The notes beneath the pieces were generated by a model. The model was given only the letters and a program-made list of their open reading frames with translations. It searched no databases and was not told the origin of the DNA. A DNA stretch of 64,000 bases from positions 124,001 to 188,000 of the IMG/VR virus record IMGVR_UViG_3300009093_000034; one strand, 5' to 3'. This document shows positions 3,872 to 22,930 of this stretch, piece by piece. Each line of letters starts with the position of its first letter. Positions within the stretch are counted from its first letter, which is position 1. The position numbers were made by a program, and so were the translations under genes.

Positions 3872-4022
3872 CAAATCGCGGTGGTTGTAACTCATACTTC
3901 GAACAAACTGTAAATTTGTCTATTGTAGGTGAGAATCCTACCGTCCCCACCAAACTTATTGTATACTACAGTCAGCTTGGTGGGGATGATGAAAAATCAG
4001 AGTTCCTAAATATTCCCGATTT
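3872..4022 (+). ncRNA. Circularly permuted tRNA-mimic RNA 1 (YrlA/Y-RNA-like) carrying a GUA anticodon-like arm
   Basis: T arm 3925-3941; acceptor 3942-3953 pairs with downstream 3977-3988; ends pair (AAATCG..GG / CC.CGATTT). Confidence 0.6.
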
Positions 4023-5339: not shown

Positions 5340-5421
5340 GGTGGTCGTGGAGAAATGGTAGCCTCGCTAGATTGTGGATCTGGTGCTTAATCGCGTGCGG
5401 GTTCGAGCCCCGTCGACCACC
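5340..5421 (+). tRNA. tRNA-His(GTG), unusually long variable region
   Basis: G-1:C73, loop TT-GTG-GA, 13-nt variable region. Confidence 0.85.
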
Positions 5422-5458
5422 CTTTGATGGAATCACTAATTTGTAAGAGGTGATTGCT

Positions 5459-6255: not shown

Positions 6256-6259
6256 ATAT

Positions 6260-6330
6260 AGACCCTTAGTGTAACGGAAACATGTGAAGCCTTGAACTTC
6301 ATGTCGCGGGTTCAACTCCTGCAGGGTCTA
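6260..6330 (+). tRNA. tRNA-Gln(TTG)
   Basis: TGAAG-CC-TTG-AA-CTTCA arm, T arm, acceptor AGACCCT/AGGGTCT. Confidence 0.85.
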
Positions 6331-6459
6331 ACCATTAGGTTATATGTCTGTACCGATCTAGGACGTTGCACGACTTCTTTCTTGGGATTAAGAGAAGCCG
6401 TGTCAGGCCTGGGGTAAAAAGCAGATTGGACGCTCAAGACCCAGCGAAGCGTTCATCAT

Positions 6460-6530: not shown

Positions 6531-6535
6531 TACAT

Positions 6536-6622
6536 AGAGTAGTACGTTAGCGGCTATACAGCACGCCTGGAAAGTGTGTTTCTCGGGTAACCGAGACGTG
6601 AGTTCGAGTCTCACCTACTCTG
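6536..6622 (+). tRNA. tRNA-Ser(GGA)
   Basis: Loop CT-GGA-AA, long variable arm, G73. Confidence 0.9.
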
Positions 6623-6629
6623 TCATTTT

Positions 6630-7805: not shown

Positions 7806-8273
7806 ATGGAACAACTATCAGAATCCTTAGGCGTCGGCTTCTACAGAGTAGGTCGAATCACCATCCCAGTAAGAATGGCATCACATGCCACAGATCGCCT
7901 GGAACAAAGGTTTCCTGGTGTTGAGATCTCCCAAGTTAAAGAGATATTGAATAAGGGTGTTCAGCAGATCGCCCAACCAAGTGGTCACGTTGAACTTGGG
8001 CAATATTTGATCATCGATCAAAATGATGGTGTGATGTTGCCTATCAAGATTCAGAAGAATGATCGACCTGGGTATGAGAGACAAACCATGGGATTCATCC
8101 CAACGGTTATGGATTGGAAACTTCAATCAGACTCTGATTACCCTGAAGATCTCTTAGACAAGTACCACTTCTTGAAGAAGATCTACGTAGAAAGTGCTTC
8201 ACGATGGGAGGTTCCCAATCTGTCGAAGACAGGAACCTTTAATGGAGAACCTTGTACCATCATCTACGTCTAA
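7806..8273 (+). CDS. Hypothetical protein
   Basis: 155-aa ORF in operon. Confidence 0.6.
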   Translation: MEQLSESLGVGFYRVGRITIPVRMASHATDRLEQRFPGVEISQVKEILNKGVQQIAQPSGHVELGQYLIIDQNDGVMLPIKIQKNDRPGYERQTMGFIPTVMDWKLQSDSDYPEDLLDKYHFLKKIYVESASRWEVPNLSKTGTFNGEPCTIIYV

Positions 8274-8284
8274 AGGAATTTGAC

Positions 8285-9196
8285 ATGAGTGACACCTTAA
8301 CACTAGAGATCCTAGTCGGTGCCCCTGCTTCTGGTAAGTCCACTTACGCAGAAGAAAAACTAAAGACTGAGAAGAACTGGGTGAGGATCAACAAAGATAC
8401 CTTGAGAACCCAACTTCGTCAGGCCAAGAAAGATTTTACCGAGCGTGAGCTCAACAGTATTGAAGACATTCACATTGAGGCTGCGCTCAAAGCGGGATCA
8501 AGCGTGATCGTTGACGACACCAACTTGAATCCTTTCCATGTCAAAGATCGTCTACGACCTTTGGGACGGAAGTACGGAGCCAGAGTTCTTGTTAACACTG
8601 AGTTTCTTAAGGTTCCTGTGGAAGAACTGATTTCTCGAGACAAGAGACGAAAGAACTCTGTTGGTGCAGATGTCATCAACGACATGGTCGACAGGTTCTA
8701 TGCTACTTGGCTTAGGAACGCCACTCCTTGGTTGGATACAATCAAGGAAAACAAAGAGAAGACTCCTGTTTATCTCTTTGACTTGGACGGTACCTTGGCC
8801 TTCGCTACAGAGCGAGGTTGGTACGAGGACAAGTTGGCAGGAACGGACACTCCTAACATTCCTGTCATGGGAATCTTGAAGAGTCTTCTTCGCTCTGTGA
8901 GAGTCATCTTTGTTTCTGGTCGAGAAGATAAGTCTTGGCAAGTCACGTGGGATTGGCTCATTAAGCACAGTGAAGTAGGTTTTGACACGTGGGATTCTGG
9001 TCAACCTATGCTCTTGATGAGAAAGACGGGTGACGAGCGTTCTGATGACGTAGTCAAGGCTGAGATCTATAACGAGCAGATCAAGGACAACTTCAATGTT
9101 CTTGGGATCTTCGATGATCGACCTAAGGTCGTTCGAATGTGGAAGTCTCTTGGCTTGTTTGTGTTCGATTGTTACCAATCTGACCAAGAGTTCTAA
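8285..9196 (+). CDS. pseT: Polynucleotide 5'-kinase/3'-phosphatase (T4 PseT-like)
   Basis: P-loop GAPASGKST, RINKDTLR, HAD motif FDLDGT, FDDRPKVV. Confidence 0.93.
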   Translation: MSDTLTLEILVGAPASGKSTYAEEKLKTEKNWVRINKDTLRTQLRQAKKDFTERELNSIEDIHIEAALKAGSSVIVDDTNLNPFHVKDRLRPLGRKYGARVLVNTEFLKVPVEELISRDKRRKNSVGADVINDMVDRFYATWLRNATPWLDTIKENKEKTPVYLFDLDGTLAFATERGWYEDKLAGTDTPNIPVMGILKSLLRSVRVIFVSGREDKSWQVTWDWLIKHSEVGFDTWDSGQPMLLMRKTGDERSDDVVKAEIYNEQIKDNFNVLGIFDDRPKVVRMWKSLGLFVFDCYQSDQEF

Positions 9197-9514: not shown

Positions 9515-9602
9515 AGAGTAGAGAACCCGGATGGTCTGGGGTCTGCCTGCTAAGCAGAACGTACGTGAAACATCGTATGGAATTCGATTTTCCCCTACTC
9601 TG
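9515..9602 (+). tRNA. tRNA-Ser(GCT)
   Basis: Loop CT-GCT-AA, long variable arm, G73. Confidence 0.8.
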
Positions 9603-9806: not shown

Positions 9807-9823
9807 TCCTTTACTAATTGTTC

Positions 9824-10228
9824 ATGAAGATCATCAACTACGTTATCATCGCAGCTGACCAGGACTTTCCTTTCGGTCAGGAACAACTCGATTGGGTTAC
9901 CCTACAGATCAAAGAGATGAAGGCCAAGAGCATCGTTTCTGTCACTGAGGTTGGTGAAGATGACGTGGCTACTTACGTAGCACAAAAACTTGGAATGGGA
10001 TGCCTTAAGATTCCTCCTCAACCTTATCACCCTGATGAAGGTTACTATGAGGATGCTAACCAGCCAACTCAAGAACAGTTGATTGCTAAGACTGCTCAAG
10101 CAGTCATCACTCTTGGTCAAGGCGAACTTGTTCAAGAGATGAAGAGAATCGCTGGAAACCAGTGGTTGACTCTCGTAGAGTTCAGAAACGCTCTTCTTGA
10201 TGCTTTCGATGCAGGGTTTGATATCTAA
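9824..10228 (+). CDS. Hypothetical protein (possibly SLOG-like)
   Basis: ATG 4 nt after ACTAATT motif; family guess weak. Confidence 0.55.
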   Translation: MKIINYVIIAADQDFPFGQEQLDWVTLQIKEMKAKSIVSVTEVGEDDVATYVAQKLGMGCLKIPPQPYHPDEGYYEDANQPTQEQLIAKTAQAVITLGQGELVQEMKRIAGNQWLTLVEFRNALLDAFDAGFDI

Positions 10229-10237
10229 GTAAATTTT

Positions 10238-10338
10238 GGCTCGGGTGCCTTGACGGTGCAGGGAGATCGCGTGAAAACGATCTGCGGCTGACAAATGGTA
10301 GGCCCGTTTAGACGTTCGACTCGTTCACCGAGCCTCCA
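10238..10338 (+). tRNA. Atypical tRNA with tRNA-Sec/allo-tRNA-like fold; anticodon loop CGTGAAAA
   Basis: Extended acceptor, 5-bp D stem around ACGGTG, 6-bp anticodon stem, long variable arm, 4-bp T stem, encoded CCA. Confidence 0.6.
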
Positions 10339-10350
10339 TTTCTCTCTTCC

Positions 10351-10358
10351 ACTAATTA
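10351..10358 (+). promoter_or_regulatory. Class B (late-like) promoter motif ACTAAWT (representative copy)
   Basis: Copies at 3841, 5435, 9202, 9813, 17506, 25809, 27284, 34723, 60014 (+) and 51775, 54319 (-, heading structural genes). Confidence 0.6.
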
Positions 10359-10373
10359 AGAAAGAGGAAGAGA

Positions 10374-10823
10374 ATGCTTTTCAAAAACCCTGATTTTGGT
10401 CATGATACCAGAGTAACCTTCAACCCAACAACGTTGCTGGGTTCTGCTATCACAGCTCAAAAGGCTATCTTTACAGCTTACTACAACGCAACTGTATCTT
10501 GGTTAGGTTTGTCCTCTCCTCCTGCTTCAACTGTGTTCTTTCCTGGTGGCGGTCAAGTTCTTGGAGATTTCATCCAAGCTACTAACAGCCCTGGAAATTG
10601 GAACCCAGCCTTGGGTCCTCAGGGTGCTTTCACTAAGTACCAAGCTGCCTTGTTGACCAACATCTTGGAGATCATCAACAACTTGACTAGCATGCTAGCC
10701 TTTGTAACGTTGGCTCCAACCACGGCTTCCTTTAGGTACGATACTTGGTTAGTTTGGAACACCTATGCTAACCAGTCTGTACCTTCAGCTGGAGATCTTC
10801 TAACCATCAAGGACCCTACTTAA
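10374..10823 (+). CDS. Hypothetical protein, possibly virion-associated
   Basis: Class B motif plus RBS; N/T/A/G-rich like the fibre genes. Confidence 0.6.
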   Translation: MLFKNPDFGHDTRVTFNPTTLLGSAITAQKAIFTAYYNATVSWLGLSSPPASTVFFPGGGQVLGDFIQATNSPGNWNPALGPQGAFTKYQAALLTNILEIINNLTSMLAFVTLAPTTASFRYDTWLVWNTYANQSVPSAGDLLTIKDPT

Positions 10824-12903: not shown

Positions 12904-13923
12904 ATGGATATCAAGATCATCGGTTGTGGCGGAGCTTTCTCCGAAGACGGTTATTTATTTCACCAGTCTTTTTTGATCAGTGAAGGTGGAGAGAACCTTC
13001 TATTTGATATGGGCAAGGACGTTTGGCCTTGGGCTATGAAGAAGCAAGGCTTGGGTGTTAATGACATCCATCAGGTCTTGATCACTCACCGTCATGACGA
13101 TCACATCGGTTCATTGGGAACTTTTGGTCTCAAGAGATACAATTGGTTTGAGAAACCTATTCACTGGAAAGACTCAAAGAGAGATTACGCTCCTACCCTG
13201 ATTTACTCCATGGACCTTCAAGATGGTCTTTGGGAGTCTCTTAGAGGTAACCTTGAAACCAATGAAGGTTTCGTAGGTTCTTTGGAAACGTTCTTCAAGT
13301 TGAAGCCTATCAAGGAAAACGAGCACTGGGATTTCCACGGTTGGGATCTTCAATTGGTTCGCCAAGTCCATGTCATGGCCGGAAACTCTTTGATGAGTAC
13401 TCATGGTTTGTTCCTGGAGAAGGGTGATCACAGAATCTTCCTGACCGGTGACTGTCAGTTCTTCCAGCCCAAACAGGTTATCTGGTTCTACAACCGAGCT
13501 ACCTTCATCATCACAGACAACGAAACTGTAGGATCCAACTTCCTTTTCCAAGAAGGAACTGAAGTCTACGACGTAACCATCGATGGAAAGAAGGTTACCA
13601 AGCTTTGGCCTACTCTTCTTGAAGACCCTGATGGAATGAAGGTCATGGAACTAATGGCCCAGGATTTCACTCCCTACAAGTGGGAAGTCTTGAAATTCTC
13701 TTCAGGTGTTCACTCGACCTATCCTGAATTGGCAGGTTATCCTTCCGCCAATGCTACAAGGCTTGCTCCTGAGATCAAGAAAAAGATGCACCTTTCTCAC
13801 TATGGTGACCACGTTCCTCAGAACAAGGATGCCTTTGGCAATGATCTTGACTGGGAAGCTCAAGCTAAGAAAGACGGCTTTGCTGGATTCGTCAAGCCTG
13901 GACAGGTCTTTCATTTCGAGTAA
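12904..13923 (+). CDS. MBL-fold metallohydrolase, Apyc1-like cyclic-nucleotide phosphodiesterase (alternative: RNase Z-like)
   Basis: IGCGGAFS, ITHRHDDHIG (HxHxDH), TGDCQF, SGVH, HYGD. Confidence 0.8.
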   Translation: MDIKIIGCGGAFSEDGYLFHQSFLISEGGENLLFDMGKDVWPWAMKKQGLGVNDIHQVLITHRHDDHIGSLGTFGLKRYNWFEKPIHWKDSKRDYAPTLIYSMDLQDGLWESLRGNLETNEGFVGSLETFFKLKPIKENEHWDFHGWDLQLVRQVHVMAGNSLMSTHGLFLEKGDHRIFLTGDCQFFQPKQVIWFYNRATFIITDNETVGSNFLFQEGTEVYDVTIDGKKVTKLWPTLLEDPDGMKVMELMAQDFTPYKWEVLKFSSGVHSTYPELAGYPSANATRLAPEIKKKMHLSHYGDHVPQNKDAFGNDLDWEAQAKKDGFAGFVKPGQVFHFE

Positions 13924-22451: not shown

Positions 22452-22670
22452 ATGACTACCATGGTTGTACATGTTTCTACCCGATCAGGGTTTAACATTG
22501 ATCATGAGATCTGTGTTCGTGACTTTGATGAAACAAAAGAGAAAGTTTCTGACATGCTCTCTAGAGAGTTCCCTTCTAAAAAGAACGTGACAATCCAGAG
22601 TTTCTCTTTAGACTATCTTAGAAAGAATCAACCTACTCTCGCGGTAGAGGATCTGTATCCTACAGCATAA
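22452..22670 (+). CDS. Hypothetical protein
   Basis: RBS AGAGGT. Confidence 0.6.
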   Translation: MTTMVVHVSTRSGFNIDHEICVRDFDETKEKVSDMLSREFPSKKNVTIQSFSLDYLRKNQPTLAVEDLYPTA

Positions 22671-22677
22671 ATTTCAT

Positions 22678-22748
22678 TCCTGCTCTTCAAGGGAAGGTTC
22701 ACCTTAAGTGCACTTAGGTGATGGCCGGTTCGATTCCGGAGGCGGGAG
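22678..22748 (+). pseudogene. Atypical tRNA-like element with extended anticodon stem (TGCA loop)
   Basis: TCCTGCT/GGCGGGA, T arm, CACCT..AGGTG enclosing 11 nt. Confidence 0.5.
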
Positions 22749-22753
22749 TCTTT

Positions 22754-22842
22754 TGGGGTGCTTTTGGGAGGGAAACACGGTTCGAGTCCGTGGATGCTGG
22801 GTGCGGCGACGGCCACCGGGGGTTCGATTCCCCTCACCTCAA
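22754..22842 (+). tRNA. Atypical tRNA (Ser-CGA-like) whose anticodon loop is T-loop-like
   Basis: TGGGGTG/CACCTCA, CACGG-TTCGAGT-CCGTG, 25-nt variable arm, T arm. Confidence 0.5.
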
Positions 22843-22930
22843 TACAAAATACTCTAGTTTTCTTACCTGTTAAATCTTAAACTAATCTCCGTTAGGAGAA
22901 AAATTAGGAATTACCAGGAGGTAATGATAT

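What the first reader, a model, noticed from the sequence alone, without database searches (positions are those of the whole stretch)
10238..10338. tRNA-Sec/allo-tRNA-like cloverleaf; the only encoded CCA end I found
It has a long D stem with a CGGT loop, 6-bp anticodon stem, long variable arm and roughly 9/4 acceptor-T geometry. The loop is CGTGAAAA (TGA, Ser-reading, G at position 33) rather than Sec CTTCAAA. It resembles the described allo-tRNA/selC* classes; no Sec machinery is visible in the window.
Basis: partly seen in the sequence, partly recalled or inferred. Interest (0 to 1): 0.6.

Follow-up and report, generated by a model that had tools for sequence, protein, structure and literature searches.

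The report
Sec-shaped odd tRNA in jumbo phage
A soil jumbo phage carries a real, evolutionarily maintained gene for a very unusual transfer RNA that is built like a selenocysteine tRNA but has a different, eight-base anticodon loop, so it is not a selenocysteine tRNA and what it decodes (if anything) is still open.

Summary
The cloverleaf at 10238-10338 is real. It lies in the tRNA island of a 305,833-bp soil/rhizosphere jumbo phage. ARAGORN and the general Rfam tRNA model miss it. One diverged homologue (77% identical, syntenic) keeps the fold. Four base pairs changed on both sides, two on one side, and only one of 28 pairs was lost (P about 7e-4 by simulation). The loop core GUGAAA is unchanged.

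The layout is 8+2+6+4+6+0+6, the published bacterial tRNA-Sec (8/5) pattern. It has a long variable arm and 13 nucleotides 3' of the T loop. Only 7+4 of those 13 layers are standard pairs, so "9/4" is only approximate. The two junction layers are G.A/A.G and A.C.

It fails both tRNA-Sec and allo-tRNA membership: no UCA anticodon, U73 instead of G73, and 29.4 bits against a cut-off of 47. Ordinary tRNAs of the same genome score 25-41 on that model. The phage has no SelA, SelB, SerRS or CysRS. The CCA is not conserved.

Best guess, at low confidence: a serine-type special-purpose decoder. Rivals are a Phe-codon or frameshift reader, a cysteine acceptor, and a non-decoding tRNA mimic. It is a new variant of the allo-tRNA/selC* kind, known from only two distinct sequences and with no RNA data.

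The parts
10238..10338 (+). The whole non-canonical tRNA-like gene (101 nt including CCA)
   Evidence: The homologue is L002:3186-3286. Identical copies occur in a second metagenome contig (L004).
10238..10245 (+). Acceptor 5' strand: G1-G7 plus purine 8
   Evidence: Seven invariant Watson-Crick pairs with 10328-10334. Position 8 is G here and A in L002, lying opposite A/G at position 90.
10248..10263 (+). D arm: 6-layer stem (C11-G26 to A16.G21) with the 4-nt loop CGGU
   Evidence: Pair 14-23 changes from U-A to A-U in L002. Each homologue has one non-standard layer. The loop is YGGU. A third variant also has U17.
10264..10283 (+). Anticodon arm: 6-bp stem with an 8-nt loop at 10270-10277 (CGUGAAAA)
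   Evidence: Pairs 27-46, 28-45 and 32-41 changed on both sides, and pair 29-44 on one side. The loop core GUGAAA is invariant. The loop ends are C/A here and U/G in L002.
10284..10309 (+). Long variable region: an interrupted 6-bp stem (10286-10304) with a 5-nt loop, followed by a 5-nt linker (CGUUU)
   Evidence: Pair 52-64 changes from U.G to C-G in L002.
10310..10326 (+). T arm: A.C layer plus 4 pairs (G.U, A-U, C-G, G-C), with loop UUCGACU at 10315-10321
   Evidence: It is invariant apart from one loop base.
10327..10334 (+). Acceptor 3' strand: purine 90 plus C91-C97
   Evidence: There are 13 nt between the T loop and the discriminator, as in tRNA-Sec (PMC5330540).
10335..10338 (+). Discriminator U73 followed by the encoded CCA
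   Evidence: The U is conserved, but L002 has UCU in place of CCA.

Best explanation
It is a genuine gene, kept by selection, for a non-canonical class-II tRNA in the phage's tRNA island.

Shown:
- A full L-shape-compatible cloverleaf with G18G19 in the D loop and UUCGA in the T loop.
- A tRNA-Sec-type scaffold: 8+2 nt, then a 6-layer D stem with a tetraloop, no nucleotide 26, a 6-bp anticodon stem, a long V arm, and a 13-layer acceptor/T branch.
- The two junction layers of that branch are non-standard.
- U73 as discriminator and a conserved 8-nt anticodon loop YGUGAAAR.

Inferred:
- It is cut out of the transcript by RNase P and 3' nucleases. Where CCA is not encoded, the phage's own CCA-adding enzyme completes it.
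- It is charged by a host synthetase, most likely SerRS through the long variable arm.
- It serves the phage as a special-purpose serine tRNA that reads UCN codons through the UGA triplet of its enlarged loop. Its abnormal loop and scaffold may make it a poor substrate for host tRNA-cutting defences.

It is not a selenocysteine tRNA. The entity and its architecture are well supported (about 0.85). Serine charging (about 0.4) and the decoding register (about 0.3) are guesses.
For: Structure under selection:
- The syntenic homologue L002:3186-3286 differs at 23 of 101 positions but keeps 27 of 28 standard pairs. Four pairs changed on both sides and two on one side.
- In my simulation P is about 7e-4. 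Slid-register controls collapse.
- The loop core GUGAAA, the T arm and the acceptor stem are invariant.
- The 8-nt loop appears in independent assemblies.

Scaffold: the 8+2+6+4+6+0+6 layout and the 13 nt 3' of the T loop match the published bacterial tRNA-Sec description (PMC5330540; PMC5389517).

Serine leaning:
- The long V arm is the SerRS determinant, and allo-tRNAs with G73 or U73 are taken as Ser acceptors (PMC5389517).
- The gene sits in a run of Ser genes in both phages: a Ser(GCU)-type, then Ser(CGA), then this gene. Isoacceptors cluster in this genome.
- The best linear match among the phage's own class-II tRNAs is tRNA-Ser(UGA), score 11 against -4.7 +/- 3.5 for shuffles.
- In the UGA register, the loop positions equivalent to 32 and 38 are C.A here and U.A in L002, and A36A37A38 is present.

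A harmless reading is also favoured by codon counts. There are 766 in-frame UUC-A sites, and Phe makes up about 5% of codons in 210 long ORFs. Efficient Phe-codon misreading or UUCA frameshifting would therefore damage the phage's own proteins.

The phage encodes a CCA-adding enzyme and Pnkp, that is, tRNA maturation and repair functions.
Against: - There are no RNA data, because no RNA run holds the locus.
- Only two distinct sequences exist, so loop registers and the 8/5, 7/6 and 9/4 registers cannot be separated.
- The UGA register puts G at position 33, where U is almost universal. The only register with a conserved U before the triplet and a purine after it gives GAA (Phe).
- U73 is not the usual Ser discriminator. 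The phage's canonical Ser tRNAs all have G73.
- The acceptor 5' strand plus U73 are identical to those of the phage's tRNA-Cys(GCA).
- In this phage clade a long V arm is not specific to Ser. Long-V-arm Lys, Phe, Gln, Thr, Cys and His tRNAs occur.
- The V arm has an internal G.A mismatch and an unusually long 5-nt 3' linker. Bulges in the V arm can block SerRS (PMC7590224).
- With filters off, the model built from this gene gives no clear nearest relative. Tyr, Ser and Arg tRNAs all score about 17 bits.
Confidence: 0.35

Rival explanations
1. It is a recoding tRNA. The loop is read in the register Y32-(extra G)-U33-G34A35A36-A37-R38, so the anticodon GAA reads Phe codons UUY. The tRNA carries Ser or Cys, which gives missense. 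Alternatively, like frameshift-suppressor tRNAs with 8-nt loops, it promotes +1 shifts or reads UUCA as a quadruplet at particular phage sites.
For: - This is the only register with a conserved U just 5' of the triplet and an A just 3' of it.
- CGUGAAAA equals the standard Phe loop CUGAAAA of the phage's and its kin's Phe tRNAs plus one inserted G.
- The 8-nt loop is conserved while the stem beneath it turned over.
- Allo-tRNAs with non-Ser anticodons insert Ser at sense codons (PMC5389517).
- From my own knowledge, not tested here: SufJ-type suppressors carry the extra base on the 5' side of the loop.
Against: - UUY makes up about 5% of codons, and there are 766 in-frame UUC-A sites in 210 long ORFs. 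Efficient action would damage the phage's own proteins.
- No candidate frameshift site was identified.
- In L002 this register gives a U32.G38 combination, which would tend to close the loop to 6 nt.
- The yeast mitochondrial tRNA-Thr shows that an 8-nt loop can read ordinary triplets (PMC7609411).
Confidence: 0.15
2. It is a tRNA-shaped RNA that does not decode. It could be a decoy or inhibitor for host tRNA-targeting nucleases or tRNA-binding enzymes, or a processing or regulatory element of the surrounding operon. The 'anticodon' arm would then be a 7-layer stem closed by a C.A/U.G wobble, with a 6-nt loop or a GUGA tetraloop.
For: - The loop ends change from C/A to U/G, which are isosteric wobble pairs. 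The L002 minimum-energy fold has a 7-bp stem and a 6-nt loop.
- There is no U at position 33 in the simplest register.
- The junction layers (R.R, A.C, G.U) lie where, from my own knowledge, EF-Tu reads the T stem and where the tRNA-Sec anti-determinants sit.
- Many natural allo-tRNA(UAU) species were inactive in translation (PMC5389517).
- Phage tRNA genes are proposed as counter-measures to anticodon nucleases (PMC10264068). Pnkp lies 1 kb upstream.
- A conserved hairpin over the next gene's RBS follows directly.
Against: - All elements needed for the tRNA elbow and for aminoacylation are kept unchanged: G18G19, UUCGA, a perfect 7-bp acceptor stem, and the discriminator. A pure decoy of an anticodon nuclease would not need these.
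- No partner protein is identified. The neighbours are a SLOG-family protein and an unknown protein.
Confidence: 0.25
3. It is a cysteine acceptor of the selC* kind, that is, a Sec-shaped tRNA charged by CysRS through U73 and the acceptor stem.
For: - It has U73.
- Its acceptor 5' strand GGCUCGG is identical to that of the phage's long-V-arm tRNA-Cys(GCA). This is one of only two such identities among 52 tRNA-like genes. The other pair, Ser(GGA) and the 9515-9602 element, carry serine anticodons (GGA and GCU).
- SelC* tRNA-Cys species have a Sec-like shape and U73 (PMC5389517).
Against: - The loop contains neither a GCA nor a UCA triplet, and the anticodon is a major CysRS determinant (PMC5389517).
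- The phage encodes no CysRS.
- There is no overall similarity to the Cys gene beyond the acceptor.
- A shared 7-mer may be chance (my rough estimate: P about 0.04).
Confidence: 0.1
4. It is a decaying tRNA pseudogene, or a chance fold in an intergenic spacer.
For: - Standard tools do not call it.
- The fold energy is not better than shuffles.
- It has an abnormal loop and non-standard junction layers.
- Phage tRNA arrays do hold degenerate copies.
Against: - Four compensatory double changes, only one lost pair in 23 substitutions, and unchanged loops.
- The spacer is filled almost exactly by the element in both phages.
Confidence: 0.05
5. It is a true selenocysteine tRNA, or alternatively a standard 7/5 tRNA-Ser.
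For: - Sec-type scaffold. RF01852 is the only tRNA-clan family listed for it (29.4 bits).
Against: - No UCA anticodon, U73 instead of G73, a score below the cut-off of 47, and no score at all for the homologue.
- No SelA, SelB or EF-Tu-like GTPase in the phage.
- For 7/5 Ser: there is one extra nucleotide on each strand at the junction, a 6-layer D stem with a tetraloop, a 6-bp anticodon stem and an 8-nt loop, and RF00005 gives no hit.
Confidence: 0.02

Closest known systems
Bacterial tRNA-Sec (selC, 8/5 fold; Rfam RF01852)
   Same: Length about 98-101 nt. Eight nt plus 2 linkers before a 6-layer D stem with a 4-nt loop (CGGU). No nucleotide between the D and anticodon stems. A 6-bp anticodon stem, a long variable arm, and 13 nucleotides between the T loop and the discriminator.
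   Different: Loop of 8 nt without UCA. U73 instead of G73. The 8th and 9th layers of the acceptor/T branch are G.A/A.G and A.C, not standard pairs. A 5-nt linker lies between the V arm and the T stem. It scores below the family cut-off, and the phage has no Sec machinery.
Allo-tRNAs, including the phage (8/4) tRNA-Ser (Mukai et al. 2017, PMC5389517)
   Same: Found in Sec-tRNA-like searches. Long D stem with a tetraloop, a longer anticodon stem, a long V arm and G73/U73. They come from soil metagenomes and phage tRNA clusters that hold other irregular tRNAs, and their anticodon meaning is often at odds with their presumed Ser identity.
   Different: Allo-tRNAs are defined by a 12-bp acceptor branch split 8/4 or 9/3, with a 7-nt anticodon loop. 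Here there are 13 layers (7 standard + 2 non-standard + 4) and an 8-nt loop.
selC* tRNA-Cys (PMC5389517)
   Same: Sec-like shape, U73, G1:C72, and sometimes a bulged nucleotide in the acceptor/T branch.
   Different: selC* carries a GCA or UCA anticodon and occurs in genomes with Sec genes (selA, selB, selC, selD), in some with a selB*/cysS* partner. None of that is present here.
tRNAs with 8-nt anticodon loops: frameshift suppressors (SufB2, PMC7803779; SufJ from my own knowledge) and yeast mitochondrial tRNA-Thr(UAG) (PMC7609411)
   Same: One extra nucleotide in the anticodon loop, kept as a heritable feature.
   Different: Those are ordinary 7/5 class-I tRNAs. The suppressors are laboratory mutants. 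None has a Sec-type scaffold or comes from a phage.

Membership tests
tRNA-Sec (bacterial 8/5) | UCA anticodon in a 7-nt loop | tested here: not met
   The loop is CGUGAAAA here and UGUGAAAG in L002. Neither contains UCA.
tRNA-Sec (bacterial 8/5) | G73 discriminator (PMC5330540) | tested here: not met
   U in both homologues.
tRNA-Sec (bacterial 8/5) | 13-bp acceptor + T branch | tested here: inconclusive
   There are 13 nucleotides 3' of the T loop and matching 5' spacing. However, layers 8:90 (G.A/A.G) and 73:89 (A.C) are not standard pairs.
tRNA-Sec (bacterial 8/5) | 6-bp D stem with a 4-nt D loop, and a 6-bp anticodon stem | tested here: met
   The D stem has 5 standard layers and 1 non-standard layer in each homologue, with one compensatory pair. 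The anticodon stem has 6 of 6 pairs, three of them compensatory.
tRNA-Sec (bacterial 8/5) | Score at or above the Rfam RF01852 gathering cut-off (47 bits) | tested here: not met
   29.4 bits in a 221-nt search. It is not reported in larger searches. The homologue gets no hit. Ordinary tRNAs of the genome score 25-41 bits.
tRNA-Sec (bacterial 8/5) | SelA and SelB available | tested here: not met
   No SelA, SelB wing domain or EF-Tu-type GTPase in the 305,833-bp phage genome. The host is unknown, so host genes could not be tested.
allo-tRNA (8/4 or 9/3) | 12-bp acceptor branch composed as 8/4 or 9/3 | tested here: not met
   Thirteen nt on the 3' strand. Seven standard acceptor pairs and 4 T-stem pairs. 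The 8/4-plus-bulge register (G8-C89) is broken in L002, where it becomes A8.C89.
allo-tRNA (8/4 or 9/3) | Long D stem with a tetraloop, long anticodon stem, long V arm, and G73 or U73 | tested here: met
   U73 is conserved.
allo-tRNA (8/4 or 9/3) | Serylation by SerRS and activity in translation | not testable with these tools
   No RNA runs hold the locus, and biochemistry is needed.
selC* tRNA-Cys | U73 with a GCA or UCA anticodon | tested here: not met
   U73 is present, but no GCA or UCA is in the loop.
selC* tRNA-Cys | Sec genes (selA, selB, selC, selD) or a selB*/cysS* partner in the same genome or contig (PMC5389517) | tested here: not met
   No SelA, SelB wing or CysRS core in the phage. 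The neighbours are a SLOG-family protein and an unknown protein.
canonical class-II tRNA-Ser (7/5) | 7/5 branch, 3-4-bp D stem with a large D loop, 5-bp anticodon stem, 7-nt loop with U33, and G73 | tested here: not met
   One extra nucleotide on each strand at the junction, a 6-layer D stem with a tetraloop, a 6-bp stem, an 8-nt loop and U73. No RF00005 hit and no default ARAGORN call in either phage.

The most novel reading that the evidence does not exclude
A phage-encoded natural tRNA with a Sec-type 13-layer scaffold and a heritable 8-nt anticodon loop that the phage uses for deliberate recoding during infection. That recoding could be +1 frameshifting or quadruplet (UUCA) reading at specific sites, or Ser/Cys insertion at Phe codons. 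It may bypass EF-Tu rules through its non-standard junction layers.
Probability: 0.12. Interest if true: 0.85.

Novelty: new variant of a known kind. Interest (0 to 1): 0.55.

Why it matters
Natural tRNAs that break the 7/5 cloverleaf rule are rare. They have already served as chassis for genetic-code engineering (allo-tRNAs). This gene joins two rare departures that, in what I read, were described only separately: a Sec-type 13-layer acceptor/T branch with purine-purine and A.C junction layers, and an enlarged 8-nt anticodon loop. Both have been kept by selection in a soil jumbo phage with more than 50 tRNA genes.

If the RNA is charged and used, it would test how far SerRS (or CysRS), EF-Tu and the ribosome tolerate such shapes. 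It could also reveal a phage strategy, either escape from tRNA-cutting defences or programmed recoding.

It also shows that standard tRNA finders miss functional-looking genes in phage tRNA islands. A second uncalled one lies 640 nt upstream.

Tried and rejected
Searches for more homologues all led nowhere beyond L002 and near-identical copies:
- Exact or degenerate DNA patterns in viral contigs, metagenome contigs (which returned only this phage itself and an identical copy) and genome contigs.
- blastn against cultured phages.
- A covariance model R1 built from the two sequences, run on the phage's own genome and on 39 viral records related by their portal protein, three of them complete jumbo genomes.
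- R1 with filters off, run on contigs carrying distant homologues of the downstream ORF and on the window's tRNA island.
- The closest portal relative with a long contig (G021) has no tRNAs at all.

Other checks:
- Neighbour-protein searches found only one relative of the downstream ORF.
- ARAGORN at relaxed thresholds forces implausible folds (Val, or Phe with a 3-nt 'intron'). I disregarded these.
- The nearest-neighbour energy model cannot rank the 8/5, 9/4, 7/6 and 8/4-with-bulge registers, because the deciding layers are non-standard.
- I considered stop-codon recoding of the phage because of the CUA suppressor-type tRNA. All three stops are used (TAA 148, TGA 50, TAG 12), and the longest ORFs do not change.
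- A phage-encoded SerRS-type core, CysRS, SelA, SelB or EF-Tu-like factor: none found.
- Expression: no RNA run holds the locus.
- I did not attempt a genome-wide search for +1 frameshift sites at UUY-N. Without annotated close relatives it would be dominated by chance overlaps.

Full report
WHERE IT LIES. The window is bases 124001-188000 of a 305,833-bp virus record with direct terminal repeats. It is rated complete and comes from a rhizosphere metagenome. ARAGORN finds 50 tRNA genes in the genome, 20 of them in the window. The Rfam tRNA model reports 56 matches. The phage also encodes a T4-type polynucleotide kinase/phosphatase at 8252-9196 and a CCA-adding enzyme at 39354-40742. No close cultured relative exists. 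The element fills the spacer between ORF 9818-10228 (a SLOG/YAcAr-like protein, a lead only) and ORF 10374-10823 (unknown).

THE OBSERVATION. Numbering the 101 nt from 10238, the sequence reads as follows:
- G1-G7 pair with C91-C97.
- G8, then linkers U9 and G10.
- D stem C11-A16 with G21-G26, loop C17GGU20.
- Directly after it, anticodon stem A27-G32 with C41-U46, loop C33GUGAAAA40.
- G47, C48.
- Variable stem 49-52/64-67 and 54-55/61-62 around a G53.A63 mismatch.
- Linker C68-U72.
- T stem A73.C89, G74.U88, A75-U87, C76-G86, G77-C85, with loop UUCGACU.
- A90, discriminator U98, and C99C100A101.

The fold energy of the single sequence is unremarkable (z = -0.92). Default ARAGORN and Rfam at gathering thresholds do not call it.

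IS IT MORE THAN CHANCE? The Pnkp gene led to a 9,743-bp contig from another assembly (L002), with 80% identity at protein level and the same gene order. Its spacer holds a homologue at L002:3186-3286.
- The two RNAs differ at 23 of 101 positions. Of the 28 standard pairs, 27 are kept.
- Pairs 14-23, 27-46, 28-45 and 32-41 changed on both sides. Pairs 29-44 and 52-64 changed on one side compatibly. Pair 15-22 is lost, while 16-21 is gained.
- Sliding the 3' partners by 1-3 columns drops pairing from 90% to 31-57% and removes nearly all double changes.
- In 200,000 simulations of 23 random substitutions, at least 27 pairs survive in 0.07% of trials. Conditioning on 11 hits in paired positions gives 0.09%.
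- The acceptor stem, T arm, G18G19 and the loop core GUGAAA are invariant.
- An identical copy occurs in a second metagenome contig (L004). A further soil run carries a variant with C17>U and the same 8-nt loop. The loop length is therefore not an assembly error.

I conclude that this is a functional RNA gene under selection for this fold.

ARCHITECTURE.
- The counts 8+2+6+4+6+0+6 on the 5' side, and 13 nucleotides between the T loop and the discriminator, are those published for bacterial tRNA-Sec. That description is an 8/5 fold, a 13-bp AT stem, a 6-bp D stem, a 4-nt D loop and a length of 90-101 nt (PMC5330540), with longer anticodon and acceptor stems (PMC5389517).
- Only 7+4 of the 13 layers are standard pairs. 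Layer 8:90 is G.A in the window and A.G in L002, so both sides changed. Layer 73:89 is A.C in both.
- The alternatives do not do better. The 9/4 register needs U9.C89 and leaves a single linker. The 8/4-plus-bulge register used in the Rfam alignment (G8-C89) is broken in L002. A 7/6 register (U72-A90, or U72.G90 in L002) is also possible. Energy rules cannot rank these registers.
- I therefore describe it as a 13-layer, 8/5-type branch with two non-standard junction layers.
- From my own knowledge, not tested here: these junction layers coincide with the T-stem pairs that tune EF-Tu affinity, and with the EF-Tu anti-determinant region of E. coli tRNA-Sec.

- In a 221-nt search, RF01852 (tRNA-Sec) is the only tRNA-clan family listed. 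It scores 29.4 bits against a cut-off of 47.
- In larger searches the hit is not reported. The L002 copy matches neither tRNA nor tRNA-Sec even at E <= 10.
- Ordinary tRNAs of this genome score 25-41 bits on RF01852. The canonical tRNA-Ser(UGA) and the tRNA-Cys reach 41.3. A Sec-model score of 29 therefore says nothing specific.
- RF00005 does not report the element at all.

NOT A SEC tRNA, NOT A STRICT ALLO-tRNA.
- There is no UCA, the discriminator is U rather than G, and the phage has no SelA, SelB wing domain or EF-Tu-like GTPase. It also has no class-IIa synthetase core (SerRS type) and no CysRS.
- Allo-tRNAs are defined by a 12-bp branch split 8/4 or 9/3 (PMC5389517, PMC7590224). This feature is not met.
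- The other allo-tRNA traits are met: a long D stem with a tetraloop, a long anticodon stem, a long V arm, G73/U73, and occurrence in soil and in phage tRNA clusters with irregular neighbours.
- The encoded CCA is not conserved (UCU in L002). It is also not unique, because tRNA-Gln 6259-6334 has one in ARAGORN's register and several tRNAs outside the window do too.

WHAT MIGHT IT DECODE? An 8-nt loop, YGUGAAAR, allows several registers.
This gives ordinary 32.38 combinations (C.A, U.A) and an A36A37A38 motif, but puts G where U33 is nearly universal.
(b) 32=Y, an extra G, U33, anticodon GAA (Phe UUY), A37, 38=R. This is the only register with a conserved U before the triplet. It equals the standard Phe loop CUGAAAA plus one inserted G.
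(c) A four-base anticodon UGAA reading UUCA.
(d) No decoding. The loop ends C/A to U/G are isosteric wobbles, and the L002 minimum-energy fold closes them into a 7-layer stem with a 6-nt loop.

Codon counts argue against an efficient (b) or (c). In 210 long ORFs Phe codons are about 50 per 1000, and there are 766 in-frame UUC-A sites. The phage would be damaging its own proteins.

WHICH AMINO ACID?
- For Ser: the long V arm; the position after a Ser(GCU)-type gene and Ser(CGA) in both phages, in a genome where isoacceptors cluster; and the best linear match to tRNA-Ser(UGA).
- Against Ser: U73, whereas the phage's canonical Ser tRNAs have G73; an interrupted V stem with a long 3' linker; and the fact that long V arms are not Ser-specific in this phage clade. 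The genome has long-V-arm Cys(GCA) and His(GUG) tRNAs. Relatives identified through the portal protein carry long-V-arm Lys, Phe, Gln, Thr, Cys and His tRNAs beside ordinary ones, and the discriminators I inspected fit the anticodon.
- For Cys: U73, and an acceptor 5' strand identical to the phage's tRNA-Cys(GCA). This is one of only two such identities among 52 tRNA-like genes.
- Against Cys: no GCA or UCA in the loop.

VERDICT. The entity is solid. It is a conserved, non-canonical class-II tRNA gene with a Sec-type scaffold, U73 and an 8-nt loop. Its function is inferred only.
- My best single guess is a Ser-type special-purpose decoder in the UGA register, possibly less vulnerable to host tRNA-targeting nucleases. 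That idea comes from PMC10264068, and the nearby Pnkp fits a tRNA-damage setting. Confidence is about 0.35.
- A non-decoding tRNA mimic: about 0.25.
- A Phe-codon or frameshift reader: about 0.15.
- A Cys acceptor: about 0.1.

The main limits are that only two distinct sequences exist despite extensive searches and that no RNA data are available. I rate it a new variant of the allo-tRNA/selC*/tRNA-Sec-like kind, of moderate interest.

Noticed in passing
window 9515-9602 (+): A second uncalled cloverleaf lies 640 nt upstream. It has a 7-bp acceptor stem AGAGUAG/CUACUCU, identical to that of tRNA-Ser(GGA) at 6535-6624. It also has G73, a 6-bp D stem with a UGG loop, a 5-bp anticodon stem with loop CUGCUAA (Ser GCU), a long V arm and a 4-bp T stem plus a U.C layer. 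ARAGORN, RF00005 and RF01852 all miss it. L002 has a more ordinary Ser(GCU) between the same neighbours.
   Followed up: partly
window 5341-5422; G000:C1:111974-112061; kin loci L063, L065-L067, L070, L079, L082, L083, L086: This jumbo-phage clade carries class-II-shaped tRNAs (82-89 nt, long variable arm) for amino acids that normally use class-I tRNAs: His, Cys, Lys, Phe, Gln and Thr. They sit beside ordinary copies, and the discriminators I inspected fit the anticodon. I found no description of this in the paper library that I searched.
   Followed up: partly
window 35775-35849 (+): A high-scoring tRNA (68.6 bits) with anticodon CUA, the amber-suppressor type. TAG ends only 12 of 210 long ORFs, but ORF lengths give no clear sign that TAG is recoded. 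One roughly 1277-codon open frame appears only when TAG is read through.
   Followed up: partly
window 22636-22748 and 22753-22843 (+): Two adjacent irregular tRNA-like elements. The second one, called tRNA-Ser(cga) by ARAGORN with the anticodon at position 31, has two T-arm-like hairpins and a weak tmRNA-model match (21.9 bits, cut-off 47).
   Followed up: no
window 10343-10373 (+): A hairpin directly after the tRNA-like gene. Its 3' arm contains the Shine-Dalgarno-like GAGGAAG of ORF 10374-10823. It is kept with changed pairs in L002, which suggests translational control or a processing signal.
   Followed up: partly
window 8252-9196, 39354-40742, 12904-13923 (+): Three genes: a T4-type polynucleotide kinase/phosphatase (Pnkp), a tRNA nucleotidyltransferase (CCA-adding enzyme), and a metallo-beta-lactamase-fold protein with a sub-threshold match to anti-Pycsar Apyc1 (40.3 bits, cut-off 50). 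The first two point to tRNA repair and maturation, and the third possibly to counter-defence.
   Followed up: no
G000:C1:55611-55721, 111570-111661, 115277-115352, 121512-121580 (outside the window): Further odd tRNA-like genes. One is a 111-nt tRNA with about 35 extra nt in the anticodon region. One is a 91-nt element with weak tRNA scores. One is a tRNA with a 6-nt anticodon loop and an encoded CCA. One is a 69-nt tRNA-like element ending in CCA.
   Followed up: no
window 3881-3949 (+): A weak tRNA-model match (28 bits, just under the cut-off of 29) that ARAGORN does not call.
   Followed up: no
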